DNA of 64,000 nt from Octopus sinensis. Lineage: Eukaryota. The notes beneath the pieces are model-generated. The model ran no database searches. It was not told the DNA's origin and was given only the letters and a program-made list of their open reading frames with translations. This document shows, in pieces, positions 42,950 through 64,000 of the stretch. The first letter of the stretch is position 1, and each line of letters opens with the position of its first letter. The DNA is taken from assembly GCF_006345805.1 (NCBI RefSeq), contig NC_043006.1, positions 28,396,001 to 28,460,000 on the forward strand, given 5' to 3'. A program made the position numbers and the translations under genes.

Positions 42950-43131
42950 TTATAGAATATTTATTATTATCGCTACTGTTATTTTGTTAGTAATTTCAAA
43001 TAAATTTTCGCATCAAATGTTGTTTTGTCATTCGTCCTTCACCGTTTGTCCTTCATCAAACAGCTGAGGCCTTGACATTGTTGTTGCGTCACACTCTTAT
43101 TTAGTCGGACTTTTAACGATTTAAAGTCGTG
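42950..43131 (+). promoter_or_regulatory. Candidate constitutive promoter / non-coding first exon of AGL
   Basis: CpG-retaining non-repeat segment ending in GTG|GTGAGT (GT at 43132-43133), about 1 kb before the CpG-depletion boundary. Start approximate. Confidence 0.4.
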
Positions 43132-44496
43132 GTGAGTCCCCTCTTCATTATTTCATTTGTTATTATCTGTATTGTTGTTTTCCTCTTAATATGCAGAGAA
43201 GGAACTTGACAAGATTCTCGTTATCGGGATGCTTATTTTGATTCTCCGCGATGTTGTGTTATTTTGGGTTTACAGTAGCTCTTACAAATGTCTTTACTAG
43301 TTAAGTCTATCTTACATTGCCTTCTAAATATGAAATTATTATTGCTGATGGATTATATTGAATTTAATTAAATCATCATTTGTTTTGTTATTGAAGCCAT
43401 ACAATCATTTATTACCCCGCGACAACGACCACCTACATCTAAATCGGATGTCTTATGTAAAGGAATCGATATATTCTGTTGTTGTTTAATCCTGTCAACC
43501 TCACCGAGCAAGACCTGATCAAAAGTATTCCAACCATTGCCACATCGTTTCTTTTTTATCTTTTTAAATATAGTACATCTTGTTGTACACATCCTATTTG
43601 TTTATAAGGGAGTGTTTGGGGTGATTTGGCTGCTGTTTCTTGCAGGTTGATCGACACAGACTCGTATATTGTACAAGCAGAATGATATATTGTTTAAACA
43701 ACCTTTATAATGATATATTACTGATTTGCATTGTTCAAGTAATGATGAAAGTCACTTTGCATAAATGATTTAACTACAGTGGCAGTGCCAAGGTTACACA
43801 TATATACTATCATTGCATTTTACTCGTTGCGCTGCGGCTGTTCAGGATGACAACTTTAAAGGGTTTTAGTCGATATCAATCGTAATAATTATTTTTGCGA
43901 AGTATATTCATCCAGTCGCTAATATTTTTGATACAACACATGCAATGGCATTGACAGACAGACACACGCCCACACGCAGCAGTTTAGTTTAAATGTTGCT
44001 CTACACCTTGTATTGAGAACTCTCTCCCTCTTGACGAAGAGCACCTGGCAAGACTCCCCCCCCCAAAAAAAACAAATACAGGCGGAGGCCTTTCCAAATA
44101 AACCAAAAGTATTGCCCATATATGTTGATATTTAAAAACATTTCACCCAAGTCTACGTTCTATACACATATAAAACTTACAGAACACAAACACATTGCGA
44201 CACAACTATTTTGCCTCAACCAGTCCTATTTTACTAAATATTCCAAAACAAATCAAGGAAGAAAAACAACCCCGTAACATTTATACATTATTTGGAAAAA
44301 ATTCTCTAGAGACTATCAAACAAACTGCCTGGGTACATTTTGGTCAACAACAGCTTCTTACTTGAGTAGGCAATATTGACACAGAACAGGACTTAATCAT
44401 GACTTTACTAGGTCGTGCTGTTAAGATAAGCAGTTTGGCCCAGTACTCAAAGAAATGTCTAATTTTAGGTTTGTATATAAAGATAAAAAAATACAT

Positions 44497-44541
<45 letters not shown>

Positions 44542-44899
44542 AAATTCAATTAGAGGTGTGTAAACCTCATGAGGGAATAGTTTCATCCAAAGAAATACTG
44601 GTTCAATACCTAGTATTTTGGGGGGAATGAATTTCTTTAAAATAATAGGTATATATAAAAACGTAGTTTATATTCATTTAAAAGAAGAAAAGAAAATGGA
44701 GATTAGAAATTTAATAATTGTTTATTATTAACAGCAAATTGGTCATCTTCACTTACAGCTGTTTCAATTAATGCTCAAAAACATTAAATTTACATTAATG
44801 TGAAGAAGATGTGCATTTGGATGTTATATGTGTGCTTATGAATTCTTTAGCAGAAAGGAACGGATTTATTGTTGTGAGAATATGGTAGTGGGGAGTAAT

Positions 44900-46840
44900 C
44901 TCACCACTACATTCTTATAAATGGCGTAGGACAATGAAGTAGTGTAAGAAATTAATGTGAAAGAGAGAGAGAGAGAGAGAGTAGAAAAGTGATAGATGTG
45001 TAGAGGGTGGATCCCTCACTATCCCATATTAAAAGGGATAAATATGGGCAGAAGGTGAGGCAGGGAAAGAGATAAGAGTAATGAAGATCTGGAGATGTCA
45101 ATGTTAGTGGGACATTGTAGATTAAGAGTGTAGTGGGTGTGTGTCATGGAGGAGGAGTCAGAAAGGAAGAGAAAGGTCATAAGATTGTATGGAAACCTTG
45201 ATGTTGGTGTAAGAAAGAGGGACAGTTGGTTAGGGGATTACTGGGAGAATGCAGTGAGAGAAAAGCTAGAGGAAATTAAGGAGGTGATAGGGTCGGGAAG
45301 AGCAGAAGGTGAATGCAGTTAAAGCATCCTGAGAGAAAGGGAAGCAGGGAGAGAGCAGCAGGCTGGTTCATCAAGAGAACCCCAGGCTGAAAGAGTGGGT
45401 TTCTCCAGCACATTCATTGTTCTTTGTCATCACTTTTGTGAGGTTCAGTATCTTGAGATCAGTTCACACCATTTTGTTCCATGTTATCCTAAGGTTTTCC
45501 TCTTCCACAGGCCCCAACAACTTTGAGCCTATTGCACTTCTTTAAGCAGTTGTCGTTAGACATAAACATCACATACCCACAAACCCAACAATTCTGACTG
45601 CCCCATTGTCTCTACCTGTACATGATACTAACAATAACCTCCTCCCCTGGTTGCCTCTGCCTTCTTTTCACCATGGACTTCAACATTTTATATACTGTCA
45701 TTCCTCTGAATACTCAATCTCCACATTACTCTTTATCTTAAAACCTCTTCAATCCTCCATTTAACTCAATTTGTTCGCATTACCCATTGATGAAATTAAT
45801 GTACAGTTCTCTGGGGCGGCCATGGATACAAGACTGGTACTCAAATATGCCAACTTATTTGTTGGCTACATTGAGTCCTATATCATTTTCCAGTTCTCTC
45901 ATGACAAGCTCTTACATTCTCTTACTCATCTCCTTTCATCCCTCTCTTCATTTCATCTCTGTCTCTGACACTTCCCTCAATTTTCTTGCCATTACTGTCT
46001 CTATCAACCATCCCATCCTCACTCTCTCCATTTCTGTTTTCTTCAAACCTACTGACTTCTACTCTACTCTCAGTTCTTCTGTTTTCACTGCCTCTGTAGC
46101 CATAACCATAACTTTGAGACTCAGACTCAAAACATGGCTGAACTATTATCCACTTATCCAATCTGCATTATCCATGCCCTGCCATTAACTATGCCTTGAC
46201 TCTTACACCTCATGTCCAAAATCCAACCTACTACACCCACTTTCTCCTTTCCTATAATTTTGCCTCCCTGCCCTTCCACTGCACAATCCTCCACCTCTTC
46301 TGTCACCACCAGTCTGACCCTGCCACCTCTCATTTTCCCCTAATACACTCCTTCTTTTAAGCGTACCTGTTACCTAGACAGCCTTTTTGCTCTTGGTTCC
46401 TCTACACTTCCTCCTAGATCCCTTTTCTGCTTCCATCCCAACTGCTACACCTGCCCTTTAGTTTCCAGCATCACCACCCTCACTGGATCCAATTATTGCG
46501 CCTTTTACAGGAAGGAATTCTTCTGATGCACCTCCAGCAACTTCATATATGCACTCTAATATTCTCTCAGTGATTTGATCTAAATTGAGTAAACTGGCCA
46601 GGAATTGTCTGATGAGTTTGTAGAGCACGTCAGTGACATCTGACTTGTGAATGGATTGCTTGCCTTTTAACATTTCTGCTCCTTTGATCATTCTGTCCAA
46701 CACCTCTTAGTCTTTGGCTTGGACTCCAACACTGGATCTCTTACCATTTGCTTCCAGAATGAACAAAAATTCATCTTCTTTCTCAAAACTTACTCACCTT
46801 TTGGTTTAAATGCATCCTCTTATATTTTCTGACTTGCACT
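44900..46840 (+). mobile_element. Old Penelope-like element (RT + GIY-YIG on +), preceded by an inverted related 3'-end segment (about 44900-45420)
   Basis: FTMDFNILYTVIP, SGAAMDTRLVLKYANLFVGYIES; decayed CYTCP...TSSNFIYAL...GQELSDEFVEH endonuclease region. Confidence 0.65.
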
Positions 46841-46914
46841 AATCCATTCATGGTCCAAAATTACATACCTTATCCTTCTACTCTCCCCTCTCTTCCCTTC
46901 TTTCCTGCAGCCTC

Positions 46915-47290
46915 ACCTTGTAAAGCAACTGTGGTCTGGGATATGCCATTACACACAAGCAGGGAAATCAAGGATAATACACCAGATATGGGTTGTCAAA
47001 GACCTCCAGGAAAAGTAATGGAAAAATTATCTAGATATAAAGATCTTAAAATAGAGGTAACCTAGATGCGGGGCCTGAAAGCAGAAACAATCACTGTGAT
47101 AATAGGTGTTTTTGAGAATATTCTGAAAAGTTCAAACCCTTGTACTTACAAATATATGTAACACACAGAAAACAGCACTGCTAGGCACCACACACATTGC
47201 ATAGAGGACTTTCAATACAGTAAAAATAATAAGACTAGAATAAAACACTGCACATATCTAATGCACAGAGTTTTGTCCGGTAATTAATGA
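46915..47290 (+). mobile_element. R4/Dong 3' fragment
   Basis: TVVWDMPLHTSREIKDNTPD...EKLSRYKDLKIEVT...QKTALLGT; followed by (ACT)n/(AAC)n. Confidence 0.75.
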
Positions 47291-47369
47291 GAGCACACAA
47301 TGAAAATAAGCCTACTACTACTACTACTACTACTGCTGCTGCTACTACTACTAACAACAACAACAACCC

Positions 47370-47580
47370 CTTTCTGTTATAGGCACAAGGCCTGAAATTT
47401 TGAGTGGGGAGGGCTAGTTGTTTACATTGACTCCAGTGCTCTACTAGTTCTTATTTCATCAATCCCAAAGGGATGAAATGTAATGTTGACCGTGGCAGAA
47501 TTTGAACTCGGAATTTAAAGACAGACATAATGCCACTAAGCATTTCAGCTGTCATGCTAACTATTCTGCCAGAGCCCAAC
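47370..47580 (-). mobile_element. SINE family B, CpG-decayed
   Basis: atcaatcccaaagggatgaaa...gaatttgaactc...attctgccag. Confidence 0.7.
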
Positions 47581-47849
47581 GCCTAAACAACAACAACAAT
47601 AATAATTTTCAGCCACAAGGACTTAAAAACATATTTAGGACAATACAAAGAACAGTGGAGATTTACTTGTACACATTTGAACAATAAAGCAATAGCAGTT
47701 AACCACAAAATTAATATCGAAATTCCCAGGGCAACTAAAGAACCCTACTGATCCTGGATCATAGTGACTGCCAAGGGCACCAGAAAGAGGTGCTCTTCTC
47801 CCATCTGTGCTCTCCAGCCTACAAGCACAAGCTCACAGTAGTCCCAATT

Positions 47850-48120
47850 ACTTGGGCACCTCCTTACAATAAATTCGATACTAGAATCAAGAAAAAGGGA
47901 AAAGAAAAAGTAGAGTATCATACCATCTTGAAGTATGAAATTCTCAAATGTTGGGACAAATTTAACAAGGTCATGATTGTTCTTGTTATCATAAGGACTT
48001 TGGGAAGTGTAATGTAGAATTTGAGAGCACACTTAGGCCTTTATCTAGGAGTGGATGCAGTGCAGAAAAACCTGTTCATTTTGTGCTGTAAGACTTATCC
48101 AGAAAGTCTTCAATACAAAG
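47850..48120 (+). mobile_element. R4/Dong 3' fragment
   Basis: KFDTRIKKKGKEKVEYHTILKYEILKCW...VLVIIRTLG. Confidence 0.65.
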
Positions 48121-49870
48121 TATGGACAAGTATGAACTGCAGGAAAAATTTTTTATAGAAGGGACAAAAGAAAAAAAAGACTGCATCCTTATCTTAGACC
48201 ACAGATTGTGGTCTAATAGGAGGCATAATTAAACTAGTTACATCAATATTAATGAGTAGCAGCAGCATCGGTAGTAGTAGTAGTAGTTAGAGAAGAGGTG
48301 TGAAGGGCCAGAAACCATTAAGTGTTAGACAAAATAATATTGTATTTTATATTTATTTTCGTTATTTTTATTATTCACATCCTTTATTTCACCCCCAATT
48401 ACCCACCAGATTGATTAAATAAAAACCTGTGTTATAGTGAAGTCAATTAGGTAAATAACAGTTATGTAGCAAGGTTGATACAATTGCTCTATTTACACCA
48501 CACAAATTTAGATTTTAAGAAGAAATCTTGTTACTGTAGCAAAGAAGATGGCAGATCATCAGAATATTTATCCTGTAACGCCAGAATTAAAACACAGAGA
48601 AAGCTTTTCTAGACTGCGATCAAGAGATAGTGAGTATTAACCATTGAAAAGTGGAATACATTGGTTTACCACAAAACAGAAGTAAAGTCTATCATTTTAG
48701 GCAAATCTCTTTGTCATACAATCTGGAATTTTATGTATACTTCCTCTCTGATGAAGGATCCTGTCTGAAGCGTTAAACTTTTCTTCTTCACAGAAAACCG
48801 TTTTATTTGACTTTTTAAGTAAACGTCTTGTTACAGTATTTAGTATTATGCTTTCTTATACTGGTTTCAGATCCCATTTGAATCAAATTTGTCTTTCATC
48901 TGTCTAATGTTAGTACAAAATTTGTATGAGAGTACATTTAGTCAATTGCACTCCTTTTCTACAAATGTGAGACAACTTTGAGCCAATGCAAAGGGAATCA
49001 TTGTTTTGACAGAGGATGTGTTATAGTATGTTGTGTTTTTGTCATGATTAGTCTGTTTGACTGTTTCAGTCTTTAGTTGGAATCATGGCAAAGATTCAGA
49101 CTTCACACAAACCTCCCTCTCATTGTTCTCCAGTAACTCAGCTAACAAAATGATTATTGTTAAACACTAACATTATATTTTGTAACTAGATTGAATCACC
49201 AGTAAATAATTTGTTTGCTGATTCTTATAAACAAGAGCATCTGCTCTTGTGAGAGTCATCTGTCTAGCAGAATAGCTTTGTCTGAGGAAACCCACAATTA
49301 GGTTGAAACATTGCAGTTTCTCAAAGACCTCTTACACTGGTGAACCGTGTGTGTTATGAACATGCATCAACTAATGAGAAGAGGTCAGATATGTTTGAAT
49401 CTGCCAGAACATATTAAAAATGTATAGATATGATATTGTTTAGATTCTTGCTGTTCTGTGTGCATCCCATGCATTATTTGTCTGGCAAACATCAGTATGC
49501 ACCAGCAAATAATTTGCTGATTCCTATAAGCAAGCTATAAACAGGCTCTTGTTAGAATCATTAGTTTAATGGACTAAATACACAATAAAGTCAAAATATT
49601 ATGGTGTCTCAAAGTCCTCTTATGTCAGCAAACTAAGCGTGTTATGAATGTACATCATCTAAAGGATGGAGATGTTCTCCAAGGATGAAAAATAACAGTG
49701 ATCAAATATTCACTTTCAAAGCTAACAGACATATTAAGAATGAATAGCTACATCTATGTTAAGATTTAGCTGTTGTTCTAAATCTAAGTTATTATGAGTC
49801 ACTAACATATTTTGTTACTAAATTAAGATTTAAAAGTTCCATATCTAAGTTATTATTTGACACTAACATA

Positions 49871-51228
49871 CACTGCATCCCACATTATTAGGCAAATCAA
49901 CCTTCTCTCAATAAATAAATGTATATTGTTCAAAACCAGTTGTTTTCCCACTGACTGTTGGTAACACCTATCTGTGCACATTCTCTTAAAATACACTGGA
50001 TCTGTGCAAACACAAACAAATGACGGTCACTATCGTGTAGCAGCAACATTTCTGTTGTCCCAAATTATTAGGTAGGTGCCCAATTTAAGTGTCATTATGG
50101 GCCAGAAACATGATCTTACTTCAAATGAGAAGTCTACCATTGGGTCAGAGCTTGGAAAAAGAAAACCAACCAGAGACATATCAAAAATACTGCGAAGAAA
50201 TCACTGAACAGTAAAGAAATTTGTGTAGTCTCCCATTTCTGTCTGGTCAAGGGCAGATAAGGGTAAGTCAAGAGTTGCTTCAAATTGTACATTGTCACAT
50301 GTGAAAATGGAAGTTGTTCGGAACCCATGTCTGACAAGTAGAGAAGTCTTCAAACATTGTGGCAGGGAAGATGTGTCAAAAACTACCAGGTGTCACCTTT
50401 TGAAGCAGGTAGCCAGGAATGTTAAACTCGTTACAAGAACCCCTCTGAAGGCTATTCATAAACAGAAGAGACTGAAACAGGCAGAAGAATACATGAAGAT
50501 AGATTTTTCAACAGTTTTGTTCACTGACAAATGCCGTGCTATCCTTGACAGATCAGATGACTGGAGTAAAGGTTGGGTATCAATCAGTGGGAACTGTCCT
50601 CATCGTTTGAGATACAACAGTGGGGAGGTGAGGTCATGTTTTGGGCTGGCATCGTTGGTTGTATGAGGTCAGGCTGTGGAAAGTCCCAGATGGCATTAAG
50701 ATGACATCAAAAACATATGTTACTTTCTTAAAGCACAATTTCCAACTATGGTTCAAAAAGCAAAAACTTTCATTCAAGAGAAAGCTGGTCTTCATGCAAG
50801 ATAATGCTCCATCTCATGCAGTGAAGAATTCTAATAGGCTTCTCTGGAGGTTGTTTGATGGAGTGGTCACCTTGTTCCCCTGACTTAAACCTGTGGAGTG
50901 TCCTGAAGAAGCGCGTATACCAAGATGGACAGCAGTTTTCAAGTAAGGTTGCCCCCTGGGATGCTATTGTAGTTACTGTTCAAAACATGACACAAGGATA
51001 TCATCACCTTGACAAATTCAATGGATCAGCACGTAAGAAAGGTTATTGCATGTGGAAGATCATACATCAAACATTAAGAGCTGTATGACATCATGGTCCC
51101 ATGATTATTTCATTCAAACATATTGTTTACCATTAAGTCCTTTATGAAGAATTTTTTTGTTAAACCTTTACTGTTGAATTAAATAAATTATAATTTTTAT
51201 TATACTTGCCTAATAATTTGTGACAATG
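49871..51228 (+). mobile_element. Tc1-family transposon, decayed
   Basis: TA+CACTGCATCCCACATTATTAGGCA left TIR, tgcctaataatttgtgacaatg right TIR. Transposase from ATG 50097 with VLFTD, FMQDNAPSHA, WSPCSPDLN. Confidence 0.85.
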
Positions 51229-51649
51229 AAAATGTTTCCCAATCACAAAATTGGCCGCCATATGTTGGCATCTGCGCACATCTGATTTATTTCAACTGAA
51301 TGTGTGCAGGTAGGTGTTGCCAAAAACCAGTGGAAAAACAAATGGTTTTGAATGAATACACATTTATCTATTATGAGAATGTTGATTTGCTTAATAATGT
51401 GGGATGCTGTGCATATAGGTGCAGGTGTGGCTGTATGGTTGAGAAGCAACCAAACAGGTTTAGGCCTACTGTGTGACGCTTTGAACAAGTGTCTTTTATT
51501 ATAACTCCAAATGTAATCACAAAGCTTTGGTTGGCCTGGGACTGAGCCTGAGACCACATTGTTGGGAAGCAAGCTTCTCGACCAAACAGCCACATCTGCA
51601 TCTATGCCATGTCTAGATACTAACATTATCTTTTGTTACTAAATTTAAA

Positions 51650-53250
51650 TTTACCTGTTCTTTATCCCAAGTACTTTAAAGTCAGAACTATTCAACATAT
51701 TTGCTTTAGAGCCAGATTTTTTTTACCATTTAACCTTCATTCCAAACAAGTGCTTGCTTTATGTTACATTTCCACTGTTACTCAAACAGACTGAAACACA
51801 GCTGAAATATGACATGGCAATGCTTGGCAGGTTGGCTGCCACTTACCGCAAAGTGTCACATGTGGCTCAGTACTCGTAGAGAGAAGGTGTCCTTTTGCTG
51901 TTTGCTGTCTTCATGTTGTTTATTGTGACTTTGTATATAATTTACCCTGAAAATGTCAAAAAGAACAGCAGATACCCAAATGGATAACAGTGAGAAAAAG
52001 AAAAGAAAACATCATTATCAATAACGCAGTAAGTGGAGTTACTAAAGAAACTTGATTGTGACGTGTCTGTGCAGTAATTTACTGAAGAATATGGTGTTGG
52101 AACTAGCACTGTGTATGACTTAAAGAAACAAAAAGACAAATTACTGAAGTTTTAAAGTGAAAGTGATGATCACAAACTAGTGAAAAATAGAAAAACACTA
52201 CATAAGGTGGAAAATGAAAACCTTGACCATGTAATGATAGAATGGGTTTGACAAAGAAGAAGGAAACATATGCCACTGAATGGTTTGTTGGTCATGAAAC
52301 AAATGAGAGTATATTATAAAGAATTTAACATTGAAGGAGAGTGTCAATATTCAGAAGGTTGACTGCAGAAATTTAAGAAATGTCATGATGTGAAATATCA
52401 GAAAATCTATGGTGAAAAAGCTTCTGCTGATTATGAAGCTGCAGAAAATTACATAAACAAATTTGCCAAGATTGCATCTGATGAAAACCTTTCCCCTGAA
52501 CAAATTTACAATGCTAATGAAACAGCTTTGTACTGGTTCCATGTTCCAAGAAAAATCTTAACAACAGCAGATGAAACAACACTGGCAGGTTTTAAGAATG
52601 CTAAGGAAAGGTTGACTATTGTTGGAAATGTTAATGCAGCAGGCACACACAGGTGAAGTTGGCAGTCATTGGAAAAAACCAACATCCGGGGTGACTGAAA
52701 GGTGTAGTTAATTTACCTGTGCATTATTATGCAGACAAGAAAGCATGGGTAACCCAAGAAATATTTTCTCATTGGTTCAGTAATCACTTTGTACCAGTAG
52801 CACGAGCTCATTACAGGCAAACTGGACTGGAAGAAAACTGTAAAATTTTATTGTTCCTAGACAACTGCCCTGCACATCTCCCCTGCCGAACTTCTTGTGA
52901 AAAGCAATGTCTTCAGCATTTACTTGCCTCCCAATGTGATATCCGCTTTACAGCCTCGAAGAGCATCTATGAAAATAATTTTATTATCCTACTATATGCA
53001 TTTTAATATTTGTGATCTTAATTATTTTGCTATTTCATTTACCAGTATATTACTCTATAAATATTTATTTTTCTCACTGATTATGAGTATATTTGCATGT
53101 GCTTTTGTTACCATTGTAGGAAGTCTGTTTTAATGTCTAGTTTACAGTTTGTGGCAGTTGGCTTTTGTTCTGAAATAAAAAAAAATTCCAAATTCAGAAC
53201 ACAATTGTCCCCAAGGGTTCCAGATAAAGGATTGTGTACCAACACTGCTA
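51650..53250 (+). mobile_element. Tigger/Jerky-like pogo transposon, decayed
   Basis: KLLTEEYGVGTSTVYDLKKQK-type HTH near 52050; LSPEQIYNANETALYW, KERLTIVGNVNAAGTH, KAWVTQEIFSHWF, ILLFLDNCPAH. Boundaries approximate. Confidence 0.8.
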
Positions 53251-53571
53251 AGTTGAAATTATAATCAAATGATCTTACAAGGTGAAGGCATTCGATACTT
53301 ACTGCAGATGCCTCAGTCATGAAAAGCTACCAAAGCTATTGCACTAACAATTAAAACAGCCTGGATGTTTACAAACTTCACTTGTGGTAACCAGCAAGAG
53401 AAATAATGGGTACTCCCTTAACAAACAGCTGATATCTGTGCAATGAGTCACACTCAAAGGAGCTTAAGGGGTTCAGGCTATATTATCAGGTTTTGGTATT
53501 TGGGCATGACTGTGATATGTTGAACTTGTTGCTACCTTCATTTTCAAGTTTCAGTATAGTCAGTAAGTTAA

Positions 53572-53785: not shown

Positions 53786-55560
53786 GTAATCAGTAAGTAG
53801 GTAAAGTATGCATGTAGCAATGTGCAACCAGTCTACTTCCAAACTGTTTTTCCTAATATTCATGCTCTGACAGTCTCCCTCTCTCTTAGTCACCAAATCA
53901 TCTCACTTTCTTTGCCATCATATGTCTCTCTCTCTCTCCCCATGCACTTCACCTGCTTCTCTCTCTTCCTCACACACTTTTGCAACGTACCTAACCATTT
54001 GTCATCTCTCTCTCTCTCTCTTCCTCTCTCATCTTTCCCCTGTTTACTATATCATCATTGCTCTTCTGCTATGCTTCATTCACATCACACCCCACGCTCA
54101 CTCCTTACTCATCATCCACCTCCTCAACCCTACCCACTCTACTCTTGTCACCTATTCTTCCTTTTCAGTATCCCCTACTTATCACTTGTTCTTCATTTAT
54201 TATATTCACTGCCTCACCAATTCCCCACCTCTCACTCCCCTCATGCACTCTCACAATCTCTTCCCACCTACACTCCTGATTCTTCTGTCCCCATTCACTT
54301 CTACTCATCTTGTACCTTAAGGGTACACACACATGCACACACATATGGCTTATCACTGCTATTTTGTCTCTACCCTGCTCCACTCCAGTTATTCCCCACC
54401 CTCTCTTCCAAGATATCAACAGCTATGTAACACCTCTACAGCAAGAACTTGTTCTGCTGTTGTCCCTTCTCTTTATGCTCTAACCCCTCATTTCCTTGCA
54501 TAAAGCTGTCTCTCTTGAAGTTCATAGTCTTACAAGCTGCATGTCAACCGGACTAGTGCTGGTGGCATGAAAAGAAGCACCCAGTACACAAACCAAAATT
54601 AACATTAAAATATCCATATATAGAAACCATGCCAAAGTAGACAGTGGAGCACAATGCAGTTCTATGACCTGTTGCATTCTGCCAAATTATGTAACCCATA
54701 TCAGCATGAAACAAGGGTATTAAATAATATTGATAATAATGACATGCAATGTTCATTATTTTGTTTATCAACACAACAATGAATACAGATTACTCTGTGC
54801 TTCAAAGCATTCGGGTATAAAATGGAGGATGGTAAGCCAATAATAAATGACATTAACACGTCTATGTTTACTGCAATTTGCCTAAACTGATGCCTGCTGG
54901 AAATTCTTTTTCTCTGTTTGTGTGTCTAGTTGTATGTCAAACAACAACAGACACAGATTGCTCCATGTTTCAATGTACTGCCAACAATGAGGTACTATCA
55001 CCTATACTAAGATATAGTTTTTTCAAGGGTTTTATGGTGTTAAGTGCCACATAGTGAGTTGATCCTAATATAAGGGCCTCTCACTTAATCTTTATGGTGC
55101 TGCTCACCAAAGAAGTCTATAGGTATCACCATCAGTTATTAAAGGCCAGTTGCAATTCGTGAATATTAGTCTGATAAGAACTCAGGCTGGGTGTCTCTTA
55201 TCAACAGATTATAAGAGGTATCATCCAAGATCCAATGGGCCTCATGTTTTGAGATGAAACTAAAATTGCTACTGAGATATTGTTCAACTCTGTTAGTCCC
55301 CAGGACAACTTATTAAGATAGGTAGGCTCTGTCCTGCCCAGTTATCTCCAGTTTACAATGGGGGAGTCACTAAAAATAGGATTGATCATATATGATTTCT
55401 ATACTTCAGGTTTTGACATTTGGCCCTAACATGGATAGACCAAATCAGTTTGGTTGGTGCTGTTATGGGCCTACTGTAGTCATAGGCACATATTCTCTTA
55501 CTACATTATAATTACTCTTGTCATTTATCCAAAGGAGTTTATTTTGAAACACTGCCTCTC

Positions 55561-55860
55561 TACACAGATGTATTGTTTAAAGTATTACTTTAAACATATA
55601 TTAATTTCAAGTTACTTCTTATACAGAACTATAGTTTAAAGTACTACTTTAAACAGATATATTTTTTTAAGAATTTCTTTAAAAAAATATAACATTTAAA
55701 GTATCACATTAAACAGGAGTACTCTTTCAAGTCTACTTTAAGCAGATATATTATTTAAAGTACCCCTTTAAGCAGAAATAGTATTTAAAGTACCTCTTTA
55801 AGCAGAAATATAATTTAAAGTACCAATCTAAGCAGAAATGGTATTTAAAGTACTACTTTA
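55561..55860. repeat. 30-bp minisatellite, 10 units, palindromic core TTTAAAGTAnTACTTTAAA
   Basis: Unit close to agcagaaatagtatttaaagtacctcttta, repeating every 30 nt. Confidence 0.9.
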
Positions 55861-56693
55861 TTTAGTAAGCTTAAGCATGATATAACAGAGAGTTGAAACA
55901 GATCTGATTTATCTAGAAGTAATACATCTTAAGTTTTGTTACTGTTTCACAGAAAACAGGATAATTTACAACTTGTGTGTATGTGTGAGTGAGAGAGAGA
56001 AAGAGTGTGTGTGTGTAAGAGTATTTCTTTATCAAAACAAAGAAGCAGAATAGTTGGCTTTTGTTTGTTGTTTTTTTGTTTTTGTTTGTGTCAGTACTAA
56101 GTTTAGATGTTAACTGATTATAACTAGTTTGTTAGAGCAAATACATATTCAGTGCCACCTGTAAGCTATAGCATAAATATGCATGAAGTGTAGAAGCTAT
56201 GCAGATCACTTTACATGTATGCATCACTGTGTACTTTTATAGATAGTGAATATCAGACTAGGAGGAGAGTAACCTTGTGATCTACTTTTCTTGCTTTCTG
56301 TTGAAGAGATAAGCTAAATATTTGGCCAAGCATATCGTATAGTATTTTTCAAAAACAAAGTCTGTTTTAGCTGCAGACAGGAACTGAATGTGATTTGAAG
56401 GAAAGAGTATTCAGATTTTTTTGTAAGTTATTTTAAATACATTATTTTTCCTTTGAATACATTATTTTTCCTCAAAATAGTGGTGATTTGATGAAACAAC
56501 TTCATATTTCTTCAATAGTAATAATAACTATTCAATTAAACATTCCAAGATTTCATCAAATCACTTTTACATGAAATGCTGAGTAGCATCAGGCATAGCT
56601 GTGTGATTGAGAAGTTCTTTTCTCAATCATAAGTTGTTATGGTAGATGGAAACTGAAAGAAGCCTGCTGCATGCTTGCACACACTGTGTGTAT

Positions 56694-56736
<43 letters not shown>

Positions 56737-57219
56737 CGTGTGTGTGTGTGTATTTGTGTACATTTGTACTTCTCCAAAAATTGCTAACCAATGAGTGTTG
56801 AAGTTGTCATTTGTCAACAAATTATCCACTGGTTTTTGCTTTTGAAGGTGCTTGGAATAGGAGACACCTTACTTGAAAAACAGTTAAGGGTGGTTATTGA
56901 CAGCAGATGCATCTGGCTGTACAACAATACATTGATAATATATCCATCTAACTCATGCTTAGATGGAAAAAAATAGACGTAAAATTAATGAATGAACTAA
57001 GGTGCTCCATCAAATAATTATTGTAGAAGAAACCTCACAATTTTCCCCATTTGCTACTTATTTGACAAAATATTCAGCATTCCCCTCTCTACTTGTTATT
57101 AGCTCACTATTCCTCATCCTTCCTTCTAGTTATGAGATCAAGCAACTTACTATTCCCCCCCTTTACTACATATTAAATCAAAACAACCCAGTATTTCTCC
57201 TGTAGTAGTAGTAGTAGTT

Positions 57220-57396
57220 ATTAGGTGTAACATCGTGGTGTGTCTTCTCTAAAACAAGCAAACAGCTTACATTAGCTTCAGTGAGCAGCAGTACAACAGC
57301 TCTTTGTTATCTTTCTGTAAGTTTCAGACCTGTTTCTATCTGTACAAAAACAAAAATTATCATTTAAAAAGATTTTTACATGATAAATTTGTACAG
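57220..57396 (+). promoter_or_regulatory. Candidate proximal 5'UTR exon of AGL
   Basis: Perfect donor CAG|GTAAGT at 57396/57397 after non-repeat sequence, 4.7 kb upstream of the ATG exon. Start approximate. Confidence 0.35.
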
Positions 57397-58340
57397 GTAA
57401 GTAAATTTTTGATATTGTATTGGTAAATGAATTATTGATATGTGATTAAGTAATGCAATTCTATATTTGAGAGATGAGGAATTATTTACATTATTTACAA
57501 TTGACTGATAACAACATAGAAAAATGCCTTAGGAATGAGAACCCAGGTTCGAAATTTCTCCAAGACACCGAAATGTTGTGTTAACAACAAAGACAAGGAC
57601 AAATATCTGTCAATTGTAAATAATGTAGGTAATGCAAGTTTAAAACTTACAATATGTTTTTTTTTTTTTTAAGATTTCTCAATATTTAACCAATTCCAAA
57701 TAATTAACAAATTTATTTGGAGTATTTTTACTTCACTCCTATTTCTGTTAAATTGTTGTTTGACAGCAGATTTAGGATCAAAGGTGTTTTAGCTATGATC
57801 AGACAATATTTTTTCCTTTTTTTTTAAGACATTGTATGTAGGACTACATTATCCAGTGTGTCCTTCCTTCTTGTATGGCTGTAGAATATGATTTTTAGGG
57901 AAATTTAACTGCTTATTCTAGTGGATAGAGCAACCACTCAAAGATTATTCTTTGGCTCAGTTGTGAAGTTGTTGTTACTGCTTCCACACGCAGATGACAG
58001 TGATGGTTGTGTTGGGTGTAGTGGTGGCAGTCAGTGTCAAGAGGGAAAGGTAGCAATAATCATGCTGTTTCTTCAGTCCAACTTGTCACCAGAGCAGCAA
58101 CATAGTCTTAGTTTTAGTCTTCTATTAGGTTGCATCACTTTTATGCTACTACAATGGTCTCTGCTCTTCTGATTTTGTCTTGTCTGTCATCACTCATATT
58201 GTGTTTCTCCACATTAATCAGTCTTTTCACCCTAGAAAAATCATCCCTCTGGATTCCTTCCCTAATCTTTCTTTCTTGGCAATTGTTAAAAAAAACTATC
58301 AATCATACCATTTCAGATGGCCTATGGACATCATGGTCTC

Positions 58341-58480
58341 AGCCCACTTCTATCTGAGGACCTATGAACACTGATCACAGCCCCTTTCACTAGAGGGCTT
58401 GTGAATATTATAGCCCTAGCCCCTTCCACTAGAGAGTCTGTGAATGCTATAGTCACAGATCCTTTCACCTGATCAAAGTG
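58341..58480. repeat. About 39-bp degenerate tandem repeat, 3-4 units
   Basis: agcccctttcactagagggcttgtgaatattatagccct-like units at 58341, 58379, 58418, 58457. Confidence 0.7.
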
Positions 58481-59661
58481 TTCAAAAACATTACTAGCTG
58501 TACTCAATTGCATGATGTGTACTTCACTGTCAAATCTATAGATTACCTTAATTTCTTCATTGTTTAACCCACAACAATACCTCCTTCACTTCTCCACTCT
58601 CAGACAAATGGCGAGGCTTCCAAAACAATAAATTTTTTGCTCCTCATATAAGTTAAACTTACTGAACTATTCTAGGAACTCCACTATGGAATAATTGTTA
58701 CTAATTCAGAATGCTAGTGTGGCATGACTAAAGTTCTGAAAGAATAACATGTATGTACACAACTAAGTTTGTGGATGCATGTGTATGCACTCTAGGCACA
58801 CAACTGGACCCCTCACCCAGTGCTCTGTCAGTTTTACAACTCCTTGTTCTTTCTTTCCTGTTCTCCTTTCCCCCACCCACACAAATAGGTCCTTCCCTGG
58901 AACCACTTCCTATTGATATTCTTCTTTTATTCTCCCTCCCCATATTCCCATCATTTTTATAATTGTCCACTGCACCCTGTTTTATCCATCTCTTTCTCTC
59001 TCTCTCTCTCTCTCTCCTCTCCCTCTCTCTCTCTCTCTTTCTCTCCCTCTCTTCATCACTCTTGCAGTCTTTAACTATGACCTTTATCTTCCTAACAGTA
59101 AATCTCTCCATCACTCTCCAGTTAAATGTATTATTATGTTGCTGTAATTAATGAAATTAGAACCTGTTACTACAAACCATTTCATATCATCTTTTACATA
59201 CTGCAAGTCACAACTCTCTCTCTTCTGACCCATTCTCAGTGGACATCTATTCATCATTCTTGTCATTGTCCTACTAATTTTTGCCATCAATTATACCCCA
59301 CTCCTGTTCACCATTCATCACATGAACCTCCTATATGCATCTGACCCCCTTTATCTATATTAATATCCATCTCACTTTCCTCTAACACTCTTGCAACCTT
59401 TAACCTGCCCCTCATCTCCTTATCACTCGATCCCTTCATTACTCTCTTATCTACTGAATTATTCTGATGCTGCTAAGTAATGAAATCAGAACTTGTTACT
59501 AGATGCCATTTAATACCTCCATTTGTATTCTTCCAGTCACCTCTCCCTTTCTTCTAAGCTACTCCCACTTGACATCTGTCCATCACTTTTCTTGTCTCCT
59601 CCAATCATATTTACTTTGATCATCCCATCTCCTGTTCACCATTCTTCAAATTCACCTCCTA

Positions 59662-60830
59662 CAGGTTCTGGCAGATAAATTGAGACAATTTCTAGGAGCA
59701 TAAAACTGGTTATAAATAGTGAAATAATGGTAGTAGGCAGATATGATTTTAATGTAACATTTATTACAACAAAAACATTTATCACTCAATTGGCTGACCT
59801 TTTGGGCAATTACTGCCTCCACATGAGAACAAAATTTTTTTGCAGCTGCCACAACCTCCAACCTTTTGATTTTGCTTGTCACACACAGAATGCAGATCTT
59901 TAAACTGTTGACACTTGAGTGTGGTGAAGCAGTGGTCCTTGGTTGAAGTATTCCCCATAAAAAGTAATTAAGAAGGTTGAAATCTGGGCTATTACTGGGC
60001 CAGATGTTGGCCCTCACAAAAAATGGCACCTTCTCACCAAGGAAGGCTTGTGTTGCTTTTGACCAATGGCATGGTGCAGAATCCTGGATAAGCACCACAT
60101 TATCAAGCCCAAACTTCTGCTCCATCCAAGGTAACAGAGAGTTCCTCAGGGTATCCAGATACTCTTTTGTGCCGATCTTCAAGCCTGACTCAATGAAGTG
60201 TGGATCCATGACACTTCTATCACTTGTCATGGCTCCAAATACCACCACAGAGGCAGGATTCTTAGTCACAAACACAGTGGGGACATTTGAAGGGTTCTAT
60301 GCAATCACTCGAGAATTTCTGCAATTCACTTCAGTGTCCACAGTGAACTTCTTCTCATCCACAAACATGAGAGTTTTTCCTTCACCTTGGTGCTTGATGA
60401 TTGACAGAAGCTTTGGGCATCTTGGCTCTGATTGCTTTGGCCTTGGTTGATAGGATGTGACAGCATCATCAAACAAAGCTAGTCATGCTAAGTTTCCTGT
60501 TCACAGCTCTAGACACCATGGAAAGGGACATGTTGCATTTCTTTGCAAGAGTTGTCATGGATGTTGATGGGTTGGCTTCAATCAAGCATTTGAGACCAGT
60601 GAGAAACATTGGATTGCACTTGGAATCACTTCAAGTCTTGTATTCTTTTCTATGTTTTCCCCTCTTCTTTAAATTGTTTATACACATGATAAACTGTTGC
60701 TTTTGGAAGTTTTGTCAACTTAACAATTTTATTGGCAGTGTACCTGGCACATGCCAGAACAGCAATGGCAGAATGATTCTGTTGTTCCATGACTTTCTTT
60801 AGTCAAGTCAGTTTGCTATTTACCTGAAAA
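59662..60830 (-). mobile_element. maT (DD37D) Tc1/mariner transposon, decayed
   Basis: QDSAPCH-x-WPSNSPDFNLLNY with 37 residues between the second D and the third catalytic position (now N). Terminus TA+CAGGTTCTGGCAGATAAATTGAGAC. Confidence 0.8.
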
Positions 60831-60879
60831 ATAAAGAGGGGGTTTAGATTTTCAAGCAAGGACAGAATGGGGGAGTGAG

Positions 60880-61795
60880 AGGTAGGCATAGTGCATGAGA
60901 GGGGAAGGAGTCTACATCACCTTGTCCAGATCAACCAGGGCCCTCTTTGCTACGAGAAGTGTGGAGGATGATCCTTGTTGCAAGACCTCTGACATAGCAG
61001 TGCAAGTTGATCTCAGTTCCAGAACAGGTGTCAGGTATCTCCACAAACTTGGTTACTATGGCAGAGCAGGAAGAAGGAAGCCACATCTTTGACCAGCCAA
61101 TATGAAGTGGAGAAAAGATTGGGCCAGTGAGATGGTGGAGATGCCACTAGCGTTTTGGGACACTGTCATATTCTCTGATGAGTCCAGATTTGCTGTATTT
61201 CCTAACAGTGGTCGAGTATGCGTCTGGAGACTCTGTGATCAAAAATTTGATGTGAAAAGATTGCAACCAGCAATGAAACACAGCAGCTATTCTGTGATGG
61301 TCTGGGGAACAATTTAGAGCAATGGTTGATCAGAGCTGGTGAAGTGAGGGAAAGATAAACTCAAATAAATATGTGTCCATATTGCAGACAGGACACCTTC
61401 CAAACTTTTCCAGTGGTGAAATGATTAAAGAAGACTCTATTTATGGAAGATGGGATTCCTTGTCACATGGTTAAAATGACCCAAGATTTGTTGGAAAAGA
61501 ATGGCATTAGAAAGCTTCCACAGCCAAGCCAGTCACCAGATATTAACCCTATAGAATATCTCTGGGGAATAATGGACAGGACATTTCATAAACTGAACAA
61601 GAAAGCATCTTCAAAGCCAGATCTTTTGAGATTATTGCATGAAACTTAGCAAGAGAATATTCACCATCTGATCAGTAGCATGCCTAATAGGGCCCTTGCA
61701 TTAAAAAATGCAAAGAGCATGTCTGAATGTATAATTTCAGATTTAAATAAATTTTAATGATTACAAGGGTGTCTATTTACTTCTTTCATGTGTGT
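60880..61795 (+). mobile_element. Tc1 (DD34E) transposon fragment
   Basis: VIFSDESRF, SVMVWG, EDGIPCH-x-PSQSPDINPIE with 34-residue spacing. Confidence 0.85.
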
Positions 61796-62082
61796 CTCTG
61801 TGTGTGTGTCTGTGTATACCTTATACATTTACTATCTTGTACTAATGTAAAGAAATTTATATCAGTTGTTAGCAAACAAAGTGATGGCTGTAATGAAGAC
61901 TAGGATGCTAAACTAACTGCCTTAAGGTAACTACTTGGATATATCACAGCCTTCTGTTGAAATATCCTCAGGTTTACTGTTCTTCATTAGTCTAAGTGTG
62001 ATAAATTAAGTACCTGAAATATATTATGGTTAAGTCAATTGATTGTATCAGGACTGATAATTATCCTCCTTTCTTTTTCTAG

Positions 62083-62202
62083 GTCAGTGCAAACATCTGG
62101 TTAACCTTGAGCATAGAACCATGAAGAAGCATTTGCAGATACGGACTTTGACGATCCATAAGGGAGAAAATACGGAGACCACCCTATTCCGTCTGGAGAA
62201 AG
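62083..62202 (+). CDS. AGL: Glycogen debranching enzyme, exon carrying the canonical start (ATG 62121)
   Basis: Polypyrimidine acceptor (cctttctttttctAG, 62081-62082) and donor AAG|GTAAGT. From ATG 62121 it reads MKKHLQIRTLTIHKGENTETTLFRLEK, matching the AGL N-terminal pattern (human [28 protein letters not shown], recalled). 82 coding nt, phase 1. The 38 nt before the ATG are open in frame. Confidence 0.93.
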
Positions 62203-62764
62203 GTAAGTTGAACAGTTTTGAATATGTTTGAACATGACTGGAAGTATTCATAGAAAGTTCTGGCTGTTTAGCTAAATATGTATATATATAATATAGAATA
62301 AAGAGAGGTGTTCTCTGTTGATGGAAAACAACTGTGATTAGATTTCACATTTGAATCTGTCTGAACACATTATAAGAATGGGCATGTTATTAATTATGAG
62401 ACTTTTTTTTTTTAGAAAGTCTCAGTGATATTGAGCAGAGAATCAGAAATGATGTGGTGCAAAGAATAAGTTGTTAGCTTTTTGGATAAAACATCTTCAT
62501 TTCATAATACATCAGTTATTGATATTATGGCTGACATTTCTCAGTAGAAATAGCAACCAAATCTCCCTTGAATCAGATCCTGATGTCTTTAAAAAAGATG
62601 GACATGTTGAAAAATGCAATCCTAAACATACAAAGAGATAAGATGGTCACAGTTGGATTGCCTTTTAGCATAAGTCTTCTCAATCAACAGCAGGACTAAA
62701 TATCCTCCAGATGAGTAAAGTTTAATGACATCACAGACTAAATGAATATTGATTTCAAATTTTG

Positions 62765-62950
62765 GCACTGAGCCCACGATTTTAGAGAAGGGGTAAGTCA
62801 GTTATATCAACTCCAGTATTCAACTGATACTTACTTTATCAACCCTGAAGGGATGAAAGGTAAAGTCAGCCTTGGCCAAATTTGAACTCACGATGTGAAG
62901 ATGAAGAAAATGCTGGTTTGCCAACAATTCTGCCAGCTTGCTACCTTGAC
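62765..62950 (-). mobile_element. SINE family B, CpG-decayed
   Basis: tatcaaccctgaagggatgaaagg...aaatttgaactc...ttctgccagcttgctacc. Confidence 0.75.
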
Positions 62951-63089
62951 AATGAATTTTGAAGTTTAATGATGTAAAGAATTAATTCTTTACTTAAAAA
63001 CAAATGAATGAATGAAGAGAGTAGGAGCCAAAAAAATATTAGTGTGGTGGCTTTACCATTATCTTATTACCTTTTTTTTTGTCTTACAG

Positions 63090-63312
63090 ACTGGATTCTT
63101 CGTTTTGTACTCGGGCCATCATTACACGCCGATGTGGTTAGAATTTTTACTAACCACCCAGAAAATGAAAAAGACGCTTTTAAACGAGATCAGTACCATG
63201 AGCTGCAATGGGAGAGCCCGTGTAGCACCAAAAGTGATCGTCATGACGCTTATGTGGATGTTCACATTGTGCTACCTGGCTCTTTTAATTATTACTTCAC
63301 AATTGACAGCAG
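63090..63312 (+). CDS. AGL: Glycogen debranching enzyme, next coding exon
   Basis: Acceptor tttttttgtcttacAG (63088-63089), donor CAG|GTGAGT. Continues in phase: DWILRFVLGPSLHADVVRIFTNHP...YHELQWESP...PGSFNYYFTID, comparable to AGL LQFRLGPTL...VYTNYP...LDWENP...SGSFQYYF. Confidence 0.93.
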
Positions 63313-63450
63313 GTGAGTTTAAGTGTCTGTTCAGTTTTATTTATACTTGATGATCAATGAACTCATATTATCAATGGCAAATGCATAGTAAAACAATACA
63401 TGCATGTGTGAATGTACTTATATATATATATATATAATATATATATATAT

Positions 63451-63497
<47 letters not shown>

Positions 63498-63498
63498 T

Positions 63499-63541
<43 letters not shown>

Positions 63542-64000
63542 CAGGGGTTGGACAAAATAATGGAAACACCTTAAAATTTCAGACAAATTAATTTTAATAT
63601 GGGGTAGGACTGCCTTTGGCAGTAATTACAGCTTGAATTCTATAAGGTATGGACTCGTACAAAGTTTGAATTGTTTCCAAAGGAATTTTCGACCATTCTT
63701 CAGCTGAAACAGTCTCCAGTTCCTGTAGTGATGATAGTAGAGGATATCGACTCCTTACTTGTTTTTCTAAAATGCACCATAAATGTTCAATAATATTGAC
63801 ATCTGAGGACTGTGATGGCCAAATAAGATGTTCGACTTTACTAGAATGTTCCTCGTGCCATTCAGTAACAATTTTAGCTGTATGAATTGTTGCATTATCA
63901 TCCTGAAAGATTGCGTTTCCCTCCTAAAACAGTTCCATAACTATAGGATGAATTTGATCAGATAAAATGCTTAAATAGTCTTGACTGTTAATTCTGCCAT
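63542..64000 (-). mobile_element. Tc1 transposon 3' end in an AGL intron, cut by the window edge
   Basis: TA+CAGGGGTTGGACAAAATAATGGAAACACC terminus. Minus strand IFQDDNATIHTAK...WPSQSSDVNIIEHLW...RIQAVITAKG. Confidence 0.85.

What the first reader, a model, noticed from the sequence alone, without database searches (positions are those of the whole stretch)
43000..64000. Sharp CpG-depletion boundary near 44 kb: a fossil gene-body methylation edge marking a housekeeping promoter
Seen (approximate by-eye CpG counts per 600 bp): about 15 at 28201-28800, 17 at 42901-43500, 15 at 43501-44100, then 5 at 44101-44700, 3 at 44701-45300, 3 at 48001-48600 and 0 at 55201-55800. SINE B copies keep their CpGs upstream (15846) but show systematic CG>TG/CA changes downstream (47370, 53572, 62765). 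Known: molluscs methylate the bodies of broadly expressed genes, and 5mC deaminates. Inference: the constitutive AGL transcript starts near 43 kb (donor at 43131), while the upstream 43 kb belongs only to a restricted isoform and is unmethylated in the germline.
Basis: partly seen in the sequence, partly recalled or inferred. Interest (0 to 1): 0.7.

Follow-up and report, generated by a model that had tools for sequence, protein, structure and literature searches.

The report
Methylation-footprint edge inside octopus AGL intron
The CpG-loss boundary near 44 kb is real and is best read as the edge of a long-methylated gene body of the octopus glycogen debranching enzyme gene, an ordinary invertebrate pattern that here hints at an unannotated internal promoter.

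Summary
CpG observed/expected is 0.79 across 1-44,199 and 0.12 across 44,200-62,083. There is one change-point, at 44.2-44.3 kb (support 44.09-44.99 kb). Its likelihood gain is 192.8, against a maximum of 16.6 in 200 shuffles. G+C is the same on both sides; only CpG falls and TpG/CpA rise.

Upstream SINE-B copies keep 58% of consensus CpGs and downstream copies keep 6% (p=2e-8). Non-CpG divergence is equal (19.3% vs 18.4%).

The window is Octopus sinensis CM016868.1:28,396,001-28,460,000. The canonical AGL start codon is at 62,121, in an internal exon. The public gene model (1961 aa) also joins an upstream exon (12,662-13,898) to it. The boundary therefore lies inside an annotated 48-kb intron: the first 30 kb is not depleted and the last 18 kb is.

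My best reading is germline methylation of a transcription unit that starts at about 42-44 kb. The exact start site, the donor at 43,131, and the "housekeeping" and "restricted isoform" claims are untested. The phenomenon itself is well known in Ciona, oyster and octopus.

The parts
1..44090 (.). CpG-replete domain (o/e about 0.79). It includes exon A and the first 30 kb of the annotated 48-kb intron.
   Evidence: SINE copies here keep 58% of consensus CpGs.
44090..44990 (.). Transition zone. Best change-point is at 44,200-44,280 (CM016868.1: about 28,440,200-28,440,280).
44991..64000 (.). CpG-depleted domain (o/e 0.03-0.23 in 2-kb windows). It continues to the end of the window. No 300-bp stretch between 44.3 and 61.8 kb holds more than five CpGs.
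43000..43131 (+). Candidate non-coding first exon of the short AGL transcript. The 5' end is unknown. The donor is GTG|GTGAGT, with GT at 43,132. This is inferred, not shown.
   Evidence: sequence; donor 5.9 bits, 99.4th percentile, not unique; one ATG only, at 43,017.
62083..62202 (+). AGL exon holding the canonical ATG (62,121). Acceptor is ...ctttctttttctag|G; donor GT is at 62,203.
63090..63312 (+). Next AGL coding exon (hGDE_N domain).
12662..13898 (+). "Exon A", the start of the annotated 1961-aa AGL product. It adds 412 codons plus 1 nt, with donor AAA|GTAAGT. Its phase fits the exon at 62,083.
   Evidence: A conserved homologue is P0003.
47381..47600 (-). SINE-B copy inside the depleted domain: 0 of 12 consensus CpGs kept.
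53549..53770 (+). SINE-B copy inside the depleted domain: 2 of 12 kept.
62763..62950 (-). SINE-B copy inside the depleted domain: 0 of 11 kept.
15822..16044 (+). SINE-B copy in the replete domain: 11 of 12 kept. It is one of 11 upstream copies or fragments used as the control.
56632..56793 (+). SINE-A fragment inside the depleted domain: 0 of 3 consensus CpGs kept, all now TG/CA. Fragments at 51,416-51,604 show the same (0 of 3).

Best explanation
The 44.2-kb step is the left edge of a block of DNA that has been CpG-methylated in the germline for a long time. The block is the body of the AGL transcription unit as it is used in germ cells.

Proposed mechanism: methylated cytosines in CpG mutate to T several times faster than unmethylated ones. 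Everything inside the block, including passenger SINEs and DNA transposons, has therefore drifted to about 0.12 of the expected CpG content, while DNA to the left has not.

In animals with mosaic methylation, the promoter and roughly the first kilobase after the start site stay unmethylated, and methylation then rises sharply. The edge therefore places the germline start site of AGL about 1 kb upstream, at roughly 42-44 kb. From there a non-coding first exon would be spliced across about 19 kb to the ATG exon at 62,083. The stretch ending at the donor at 43,131 is one candidate for that exon.

The annotated upstream exon A (12,662-13,898) would then be either a promoter not used in germ cells or a separate gene merged into the AGL model.

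Shown: the CpG-specific, position-dependent decay; the AGL exons; the internal-exon nature of the ATG exon; and the position of the annotated start.

Inferred: the methylation itself, its tie to transcription, the position of the start site, and the expression breadth.
For: - CpG o/e is 0.79 against 0.12, with one change-point at 44.2-44.3 kb. The gain is 192.8, against at most 16.6 in 200 shuffles.
- G+C is 37.4% against 37.0%. Of the dinucleotide ratios, the clearest shift is CG falling from 0.785 to 0.124. TG/CA rise from 1.137 to 1.325.
- Recognised transposons (0.158) and the remaining DNA (0.105) are both depleted.
- SINE-B copies keep 57/98 CpGs upstream and 2/35 downstream (p=2e-8). 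Non-CpG divergence is 19.3% vs 18.4% (p=0.70). Non-CpG C/G transitions are 16.4% vs 16.4% when the consensus is built from upstream copies only.
- SINE-A fragments downstream keep 0/6 CpGs. Upstream copies of similar divergence keep 21/48.
- The loss-rate ratio from the SINEs is ln(0.056)/ln(0.598), about 5.6. This matches the ratio of CpG levels, 0.785/0.124, about 6.3. My arithmetic on these figures suggests a domain near equilibrium.
- The spliced product of 62,121-62,202 and 63,090-63,312 matches hGDE_N (E=4.4e-15). It aligns residue 5 to residue 5 of glycogen debranching enzyme 8zeq_A.
- The acceptor at 62,081-62,082 ranks in the top 3 of 3931 AG sites.
- No CpG-retaining island lies between 44.3 and 61.8 kb.
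- The window is identical to O. sinensis CM016868.1, where the AGL gene call begins at window 12,662.
[quoted passage not shown] In oyster, methylation "increased sharply after the TSS" (PMC4378273). In Ciona sperm, domains are about 0% or about 100% methylated with sharp boundaries (PMC3827831).
Against: - No transcript, CAGE or methylation data could be consulted.
- The donor at 43,132 is not unique. Stronger ones lie at 42,239, 45,055, 50,628 and 57,397.
- The 42-44 kb stretch is not distinguishable as a promoter by sequence. Its CpG o/e is 0.97, against an upstream median of 0.83.
- Octopus has a class of 6545 transcripts with an unmethylated first third (MP3) and 5482 with methylated promoters (MP1). 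An internal edge therefore need not mark a start site.
- The two AGL exons keep CpG at o/e 0.80, which is higher than one would naively expect in a heavily methylated body.
- Only three SINE-B copies and three SINE-A fragments (41 sites) lie downstream.
Confidence: 0.65

Rival explanations
1. There is one long transcription unit and no internal promoter. AGL is transcribed from about 12.6 kb, as annotated. The first 30 kb of its giant intron simply stays unmethylated, as in the octopus MP3 class (first third of the gene unmethylated), for reasons unrelated to a start site. One such reason could be a broad 5' chromatin domain.
For: The annotated 1961-aa product starts at window 12,662. Exon A fits the phase of the exon at 62,083, and the 38 nt before the ATG are open in frame. 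Exon A and its donor region are conserved in another cephalopod-like contig. The MP3 class holds 6545 transcripts.
Against: The edge is narrow (under 1 kb) and lies 30 kb into an intron, with nothing else to define it. Phase fit and an open 12-codon stretch are weak evidence, with chance of about 1/3 x 0.56. The canonical Met aligns with residue 1-5 of solved AGL, so a 425-aa extension is not the ancestral form. MP3 itself may largely reflect downstream promoters or merged models.
Confidence: 0.15
2. The methylated block is not defined by the AGL start site. AGL starts somewhere inside the depleted domain from a methylated promoter (MP1-like). Alternatively, the 44-62 kb block belongs to another, unannotated transcript on either strand whose end happens to lie at 44.2 kb.
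For: 5482 octopus genes have methylated promoters. Good donor sites exist inside the domain at 45,055, 50,628 and 57,397.
Against: Every ORF with a family match in 44-62 kb is transposon-derived: Tc1/mariner DDE_3 or pogo DDE_1. The other ORFs tested there had no Pfam match. There is no host exon and no CpG island there. Depletion continues unbroken through the AGL exons' introns.
Confidence: 0.12
3. This is a composition or age artefact. The downstream DNA is made of older or intrinsically CpG-poor repeats, or it belongs to a different isochore or mutational regime.
For: Upstream retroelements are partly CpG-poor on their own: 0.38 at 18.4-21.5 kb and 0.48 at 36.4-39.9 kb. Elements therefore do differ.
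Against: G+C is equal on both sides. The same SINE families behave oppositely on the two sides at equal non-CpG divergence. Transposon and non-transposon DNA are equally depleted. Every 2-kb window downstream is below every window upstream.
Confidence: 0.02
4. This is an assembly join. Two unrelated pieces of genome, one from a methylated gene body and one not, were joined near 44.2 kb.
For: None specific. It cannot be excluded without reads.
Against: The window has no N run. The sequence across 44.0-44.4 kb reads as ordinary unique DNA. The decline is graded over about 1 kb, which a join would not produce.
Confidence: 0.02

Closest known systems
Mosaic methylated and unmethylated domains of Ciona intestinalis (Suzuki et al.; PMC3827831)
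   Same: There are blocks of near-complete germline (sperm) methylation over transcription units, unmethylated promoters and intergenic DNA, and sharp boundaries. Transposons are not targeted as such. The boundary aligns with the 5' end of the gene and not with the first methionine. Here the edge lies 18 kb before the ATG.
   Different: In Ciona, methylation was measured directly. Here only its mutational footprint is seen. Ciona introns are short, whereas here the edge sits in a 48-kb annotated intron.
Gene-body methylation profile of the Pacific oyster (PMC4378273)
   Same: It is a mollusc with a mosaic pattern. Methylation rises sharply just after the start site and plateaus along the body. 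It prefers conserved genes with housekeeping-type functions.
   Different: Oyster SINEs and young repeats are reported as methylation targets in their own right. In this window, SINE decay depends on position and not on family.
Octopus bimaculoides methylation patterns MP1-MP4 (Macchi et al. 2022, PMC9476566)
   Same: Same genus. [quoted passage not shown] MP2 has an unmethylated start site and a methylated body. MP3 has an unmethylated first third. Measured from a start at about 43 kb, this locus looks like MP2. Measured from the annotated start at 12.6 kb, it looks like MP3.
   Different: That work used brain and hatchling DNA of another species and did not analyse CpG decay. AGL is not named in its text-held supplements.
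Alternative first exons and promoters of vertebrate AGL
   Same: From my own recollection, not checked here: human AGL has several 5' isoforms, one widely expressed and others muscle-restricted, that differ in first exons. This parallels a long and a short octopus form.
   Different: As I recall, the human isoforms differ mostly in untranslated or very short N-terminal sequence. They do not differ by a 425-residue extension. No homology between exon A and any vertebrate AGL exon was found (no Pfam match; only P0003 and a weak 170-aa hit, P0004).

Membership tests
Footprint of an invertebrate germline-methylated domain (gene-body methylation) | CpG-specific depletion with a reciprocal TpG/CpA excess, at unchanged base composition | tested here: met
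   CG ratio 0.785 to 0.124. TG/CA 1.137 to 1.325. G+C 37.4% vs 37.0%.
Footprint of an invertebrate germline-methylated domain (gene-body methylation) | Faster decay at CpG sites only, in interspersed repeats, set by position and not by repeat family or age | tested here: met
   SINE-B copies keep 58% vs 6% of CpGs (p=2e-8). Non-CpG divergence is 19.3% vs 18.4%, and non-CpG C/G transitions are 16.4% vs 16.4%. SINE-A fragments keep 0/6 vs 21/48.
Footprint of an invertebrate germline-methylated domain (gene-body methylation) | Domain coincides with a transcription unit and begins shortly after its start site | tested here: inconclusive
   The domain runs into AGL exons 62,083-62,202 and 63,090-63,312. 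The ATG exon is internal. No start site could be mapped, and the donor at 43,132 is not unique.
Footprint of an invertebrate germline-methylated domain (gene-body methylation) | 5-methylcytosine actually present on the domain in germ cells | not testable with these tools
   No methylation data are available. Octopus gene-body methylation is documented only for O. bimaculoides brain and hatchling (PMC9476566).
Footprint of an invertebrate germline-methylated domain (gene-body methylation) | Gene is broadly or constitutively expressed | not testable with these tools
   No expression data are available. AGL was not found in the text-held supplements of PMC9476566.
Glycogen debranching enzyme gene (AGL) | N-terminal hGDE_N domain encoded by the exons in the window | tested here: met
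   PF14699 at E=4.4e-15. 8zeq_A residues 5-96 at E=8.4e-16.
Glycogen debranching enzyme gene (AGL) | Full domain set: hGDE_N, hDGE_amylase, hGDE_central, GDE_C | tested here: met
   The gene call that starts at window 12,662 in CM016868.1 carries all four Pfam families. The exons themselves lie beyond the window.
Vertebrate-type CpG-island promoter | A short G+C-rich, CpG-rich island standing out from depleted DNA on both sides | tested here: not met
   42.0-44.1 kb has G+C 33% and o/e 0.97. The whole 44 kb to its left is equally undepleted. This is an edge, not an island.

The most novel reading that the evidence does not exclude
The edge reveals an unannotated internal promoter at about 42-44 kb that drives the canonical 1536-aa enzyme in germ cells and most tissues. 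On this reading the annotated 425-residue N-terminal extension is a genuine, tissue-restricted, cephalopod-specific long form of glycogen debranching enzyme. That extension is exon A, which is acidic and Ser-rich and carries the conserved motif YESLSSGITEYTVRILPGGIVEK. If so, CpG-decay edges inside annotated introns could be used genome-wide in octopus to separate germline-active promoters from tissue-restricted ones, and to explain the MP3 methylation class.
Probability: 0.3. Interest if true: 0.45.

Novelty: new member of a known kind. Interest (0 to 1): 0.3.

Why it matters
On its own this is a textbook example of mosaic invertebrate methylation read from sequence alone. Its practical value is local.

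First, it argues that the public 1961-aa AGL model of O. sinensis does not describe the transcript used in germ cells, and it points to a start site about 30 kb downstream of the annotated one.

Second, it shows that in octopus the same SINE families decay about 5-6 times faster at CpG inside the block than outside. Methylation therefore follows position (the transcription unit) and not repeat identity.

Third, it suggests a cheap sequence-only way to flag merged gene models or alternative promoters behind the "first third unmethylated" gene class reported for octopus.

Tried and rejected
- A homology search with the AGL exon returned only two distant fragments, P0001 and P0002. Their contigs L001-L004 come from other, more compact genomes and were not comparable.
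- A search with the 423-aa ORF gave one hit in each protein database. Its contig L005 holds the orthologue of exon A. It does not reach AGL and shares nothing with 41.5-45 kb except microsatellites.
- An exact look-up of the ORF alone found nothing on record.
- The O. bimaculoides Tigger locus L007 is a paralogous copy and not the orthologous locus.
- A metagenome scan for the 5' end of the ATG exon gave 0 hits.
- Rfam and tRNA scans of the window found nothing.
- A literature search for the SINE sequence, and for AGL in the octopus methylome supplements, found nothing.
- A donor-site weight matrix did not single out 43,132.
- Strand asymmetry gave no usable direction-of-transcription signal. 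TG vs CA is 1360 vs 1402 downstream, and the GC/AT skews are small and probably driven by transposons.
- The isochore, repeat-age and repeat-composition explanations were tested and rejected.


Full report
**1.

The window has 1315 CpGs. CpG o/e in 1-kb bins is 0.31-1.26 up to 44 kb. It then falls to 0.36 at 44-45 kb and to 0.03-0.26 from 45 to 63 kb. Pooled values are 0.79 for 1-44,199 and 0.12 for 44,200-62,083.

A Poisson change-point model puts the break at 44,200 (100- or 200-bp bins) or 44,280 (10-bp steps). The support interval is 44,090-44,990. The likelihood gain is 192.8, and 200 shuffles of the bins never exceeded 16.6. With a threshold set above that null, no second boundary is called in the window.

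Every 2-kb window upstream (minimum 0.38) exceeds every 2-kb window between 45 and 62 kb (maximum 0.23). The fall is steep but graded over about 1 kb: 0.97, then 0.36, then 0.08.

**2. The loss is specific to CpG and is not an effect of composition or age**

G+C is 37.4% upstream and 37.0% downstream. Among the symmetrised dinucleotide ratios, CG drops from 0.785 to 0.124 and TG/CA rise from 1.137 to 1.325. Recognised transposon pieces (0.158) and the rest of the domain (0.105) are both depleted.

A profile of the ~225-bp tRNA-derived "SINE B" finds 11 copies or fragments upstream and 3 downstream. Results at the 12 consensus CpG sites:

| | Upstream copies | Downstream copies |
|---|---|---|
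| Consensus CpGs kept | 57/98 (58%) | 2/35 (6%) |
| Sites now TG or CA | not tallied here | 28/35 |
| Non-CpG divergence | 19.3% | 18.4% |

The difference in CpG retention gives Fisher p=2e-8, and the non-CpG divergence does not differ (p=0.70). When the consensus is rebuilt from upstream copies only, retention is 60% vs 5.6%, and non-CpG C/G transitions are 16.4% vs 16.4%.

A second family, "SINE A" (~430 bp), agrees. Its downstream fragments keep 0 of 6 CpGs. Upstream copies of similar divergence keep 21 of 48.

The implied ratio of CpG loss rates is about 5.6. This matches the ratio of CpG levels, about 6.3, which suggests the domain is close to equilibrium. That last step is my own arithmetic on these numbers.

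**3. What the window is, and where the genes are**

The Tigger-like ORF at 6,209-7,045 has its best matches in Octopus sinensis and O. bimaculoides. The O. sinensis locus fetched through the top hit is 100% identical to window 1-17,319. The window is therefore GCA_006345805.1, chromosome CM016868.1, 28,396,001-28,460,000.

Two AGL exons lie at the right end:
- 62,083-62,202, with the ATG at 62,121.
- 63,090-63,312.

Their spliced product matches Pfam hGDE_N (E=4.4e-15). It aligns from residue 5 to residue 5 of the solved 1532-aa glycogen debranching enzyme 8zeq_A. The ATG at 62,121 is therefore the canonical start.

The ATG exon is preceded by one of the three best pyrimidine-tract acceptors among 3931 AG sites, 38 nt before the ATG. 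At least one exon must therefore lie upstream.

In the public record, the gene call carrying all four AGL Pfam domains has a 1961-aa product and begins at window 12,662. That position is the ATG of a 423-codon open frame. Its donor, AAA|GTAAGT at 13,899, leaves phase 1, which fits the exon at 62,083. The 38 nt before the canonical ATG are open in frame. The arithmetic is 425 residues plus 1536, which equals 1961.

This "exon A" has no Pfam match. It does have one real homologue, P0003, at about 35% identity, with the shared motif YESLSSGITEYTVRILPGGIVEK. A block about 78-81% identical at the DNA level lies just before its ATG. Both are on a 531-kb ENA contig from another, more distant species.

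**4. Consequence: the boundary sits inside the annotated 48-kb intron (13.9-62.1 kb)**

The first 30 kb of that intron has normal CpG content, and so do exon A (o/e 0.80) and everything to its left. The last 18 kb is depleted.

Between 44.3 and 61.8 kb, every ORF that matches a family is transposon-derived (Tc1/mariner or pogo). No 300-bp stretch there holds more than five CpGs, against an upstream mean of 8.3. There is therefore no sign of an unmethylated promoter island between the edge and the ATG exon.

**5. Mechanism**

Three established findings are relevant:
- In Ciona sperm, DNA is either about 100% or about 0% methylated, in blocks with sharp boundaries that follow transcription units. 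Transposons are not targets as such (PMC3827831).
- In oyster, methylation rises sharply just after the start site (PMC4378273).
[quoted passage not shown] A large class of genes has a methylated body and an unmethylated start site (PMC9476566).

Methylated CpGs mutate to TpG/CpA faster than unmethylated ones. The pattern here is what a long-standing methylated block would leave. The fact that identical SINE families decay differently by position fits block-wise targeting rather than repeat-wise targeting.

I therefore read the edge as the 5' limit of the methylated body of the AGL unit as transcribed in germ cells. Its start site would lie about 1 kb to the left, at 42-44 kb.

It is not singled out by sequence, however. 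About 20 donors in the window score as well or better, including one at 42,239.

Methylation itself, its tie to transcription, the start site and expression breadth are all inferred.

**6. Rivals**

- **(a) One long unit, no internal promoter.** Transcription would run from about 12.6 kb with a 30-kb unmethylated 5' zone. This corresponds to the octopus "first third unmethylated" class, so an internal edge is not proof of a promoter.
- **(b) A different unit or a methylated promoter.** AGL would start inside the block from a methylated promoter, or another unannotated transcript would own the block.
- **(c) Composition or age.** Tested and rejected, as described in section 2.
- **(d) An assembly join.** Unlikely, given the graded decline and ordinary sequence across the site.

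Whether exon A is a true long isoform or a separate gene merged by the annotation pipeline cannot be decided here. Both options are compatible with a start site near 43 kb.

**7. Comparison and novelty**

The phenomenon is well described. It is not a vertebrate-style CpG island, because 42-44.1 kb has 33% G+C and is no richer in CpG than the 40 kb to its left.

What is specific to this locus is that the footprint contradicts the annotated 5' end of AGL and offers a concrete, cheap prediction of an internal promoter.

I rate it a new member of a known kind, of modest interest.

**8. A loose end**

The two AGL exons keep 13 CpGs (o/e 0.80). About 2 would be expected at the flanking intron rate (Poisson P=2e-7). 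Eight of the 13 have a synonymous decay route.

Purifying selection and a lower exonic mutation rate can explain part of this. With only 343 nt, the value is also not clearly above the ~0.5 that coding sequence might hold at equilibrium. It needs the rest of the gene to judge.

It also warns that CpG o/e computed on coding sequence alone could misclass this gene as unmethylated.

Noticed in passing
window 62083-62202 and 63090-63312: The two AGL coding exons keep CpG at o/e 0.80 (13 CpGs), while the introns around them are at 0.09-0.12. Eight of the 13 could decay synonymously. A CpG o/e computed from coding sequence alone would misclass this gene.
   Followed up: partly
window 12662-13898: This large, acidic, Ser/Glu-rich coding exon is annotated as the N-terminus of a 1961-aa AGL. 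It has no Pfam match. It has one homologue (P0003, about 35% identity, motif YESLSSGITEYTVRILPGGIVEK). It may be a long isoform or a separate gene merged into the model.
   Followed up: partly
window 12367-12669; L005 9771-10008: A non-coding block just before the exon A ATG is 78-81% identical to the distant homologous contig. That is far better conserved than the protein itself (about 35%). It is probably a conserved 5' UTR or promoter.
   Followed up: partly
window 18436-21524 and 36400-39900: Two retroelements in the otherwise CpG-replete region are partly CpG-poor (o/e 0.38 and 0.48). The first has RT-like ORFs between 300-bp inverted repeats (18436-18733 / 21226-21524, 85% identical). 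The second is a rearranged LINE, with RT on the minus strand and endonuclease on the plus strand.
   Followed up: partly
window 49868-51414: A Tc1/mariner-like element with ~205-bp inverted ends (49868-50072 / 51209-51414, 77% identical) lies inside the depleted domain. It has slightly more CpG than its surroundings (about 0.22), as expected of a later insert still decaying. The mariner fragment at 63597-63923 keeps 6 CpGs.
   Followed up: partly
window 227-269 and 23925-24001: Short interstitial telomere-like repeats: TTAGGG x5, and CCCTAA-like x12.
   Followed up: no
window 55564-55860: An AT-rich minisatellite with a 30/60-bp unit and about 9.6 copies.
   Followed up: no
window 6308-7319: The Tigger/pogo transposase remnant is annotated in the public record as a spliced host gene (P0005, "tigger transposable element-derived protein 1-like"). 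A paralogous copy, 84% identical at the DNA level, exists in O. bimaculoides (L007).
   Followed up: yes
window 12662-13898 and 63090-63312 (database behaviour): Neither protein search returned the 1961-aa O. sinensis AGL, although other proteins of the same chromosome are in the database. The absence of Octopus AGL hits is therefore a search limitation, not biology.
   Followed up: partly
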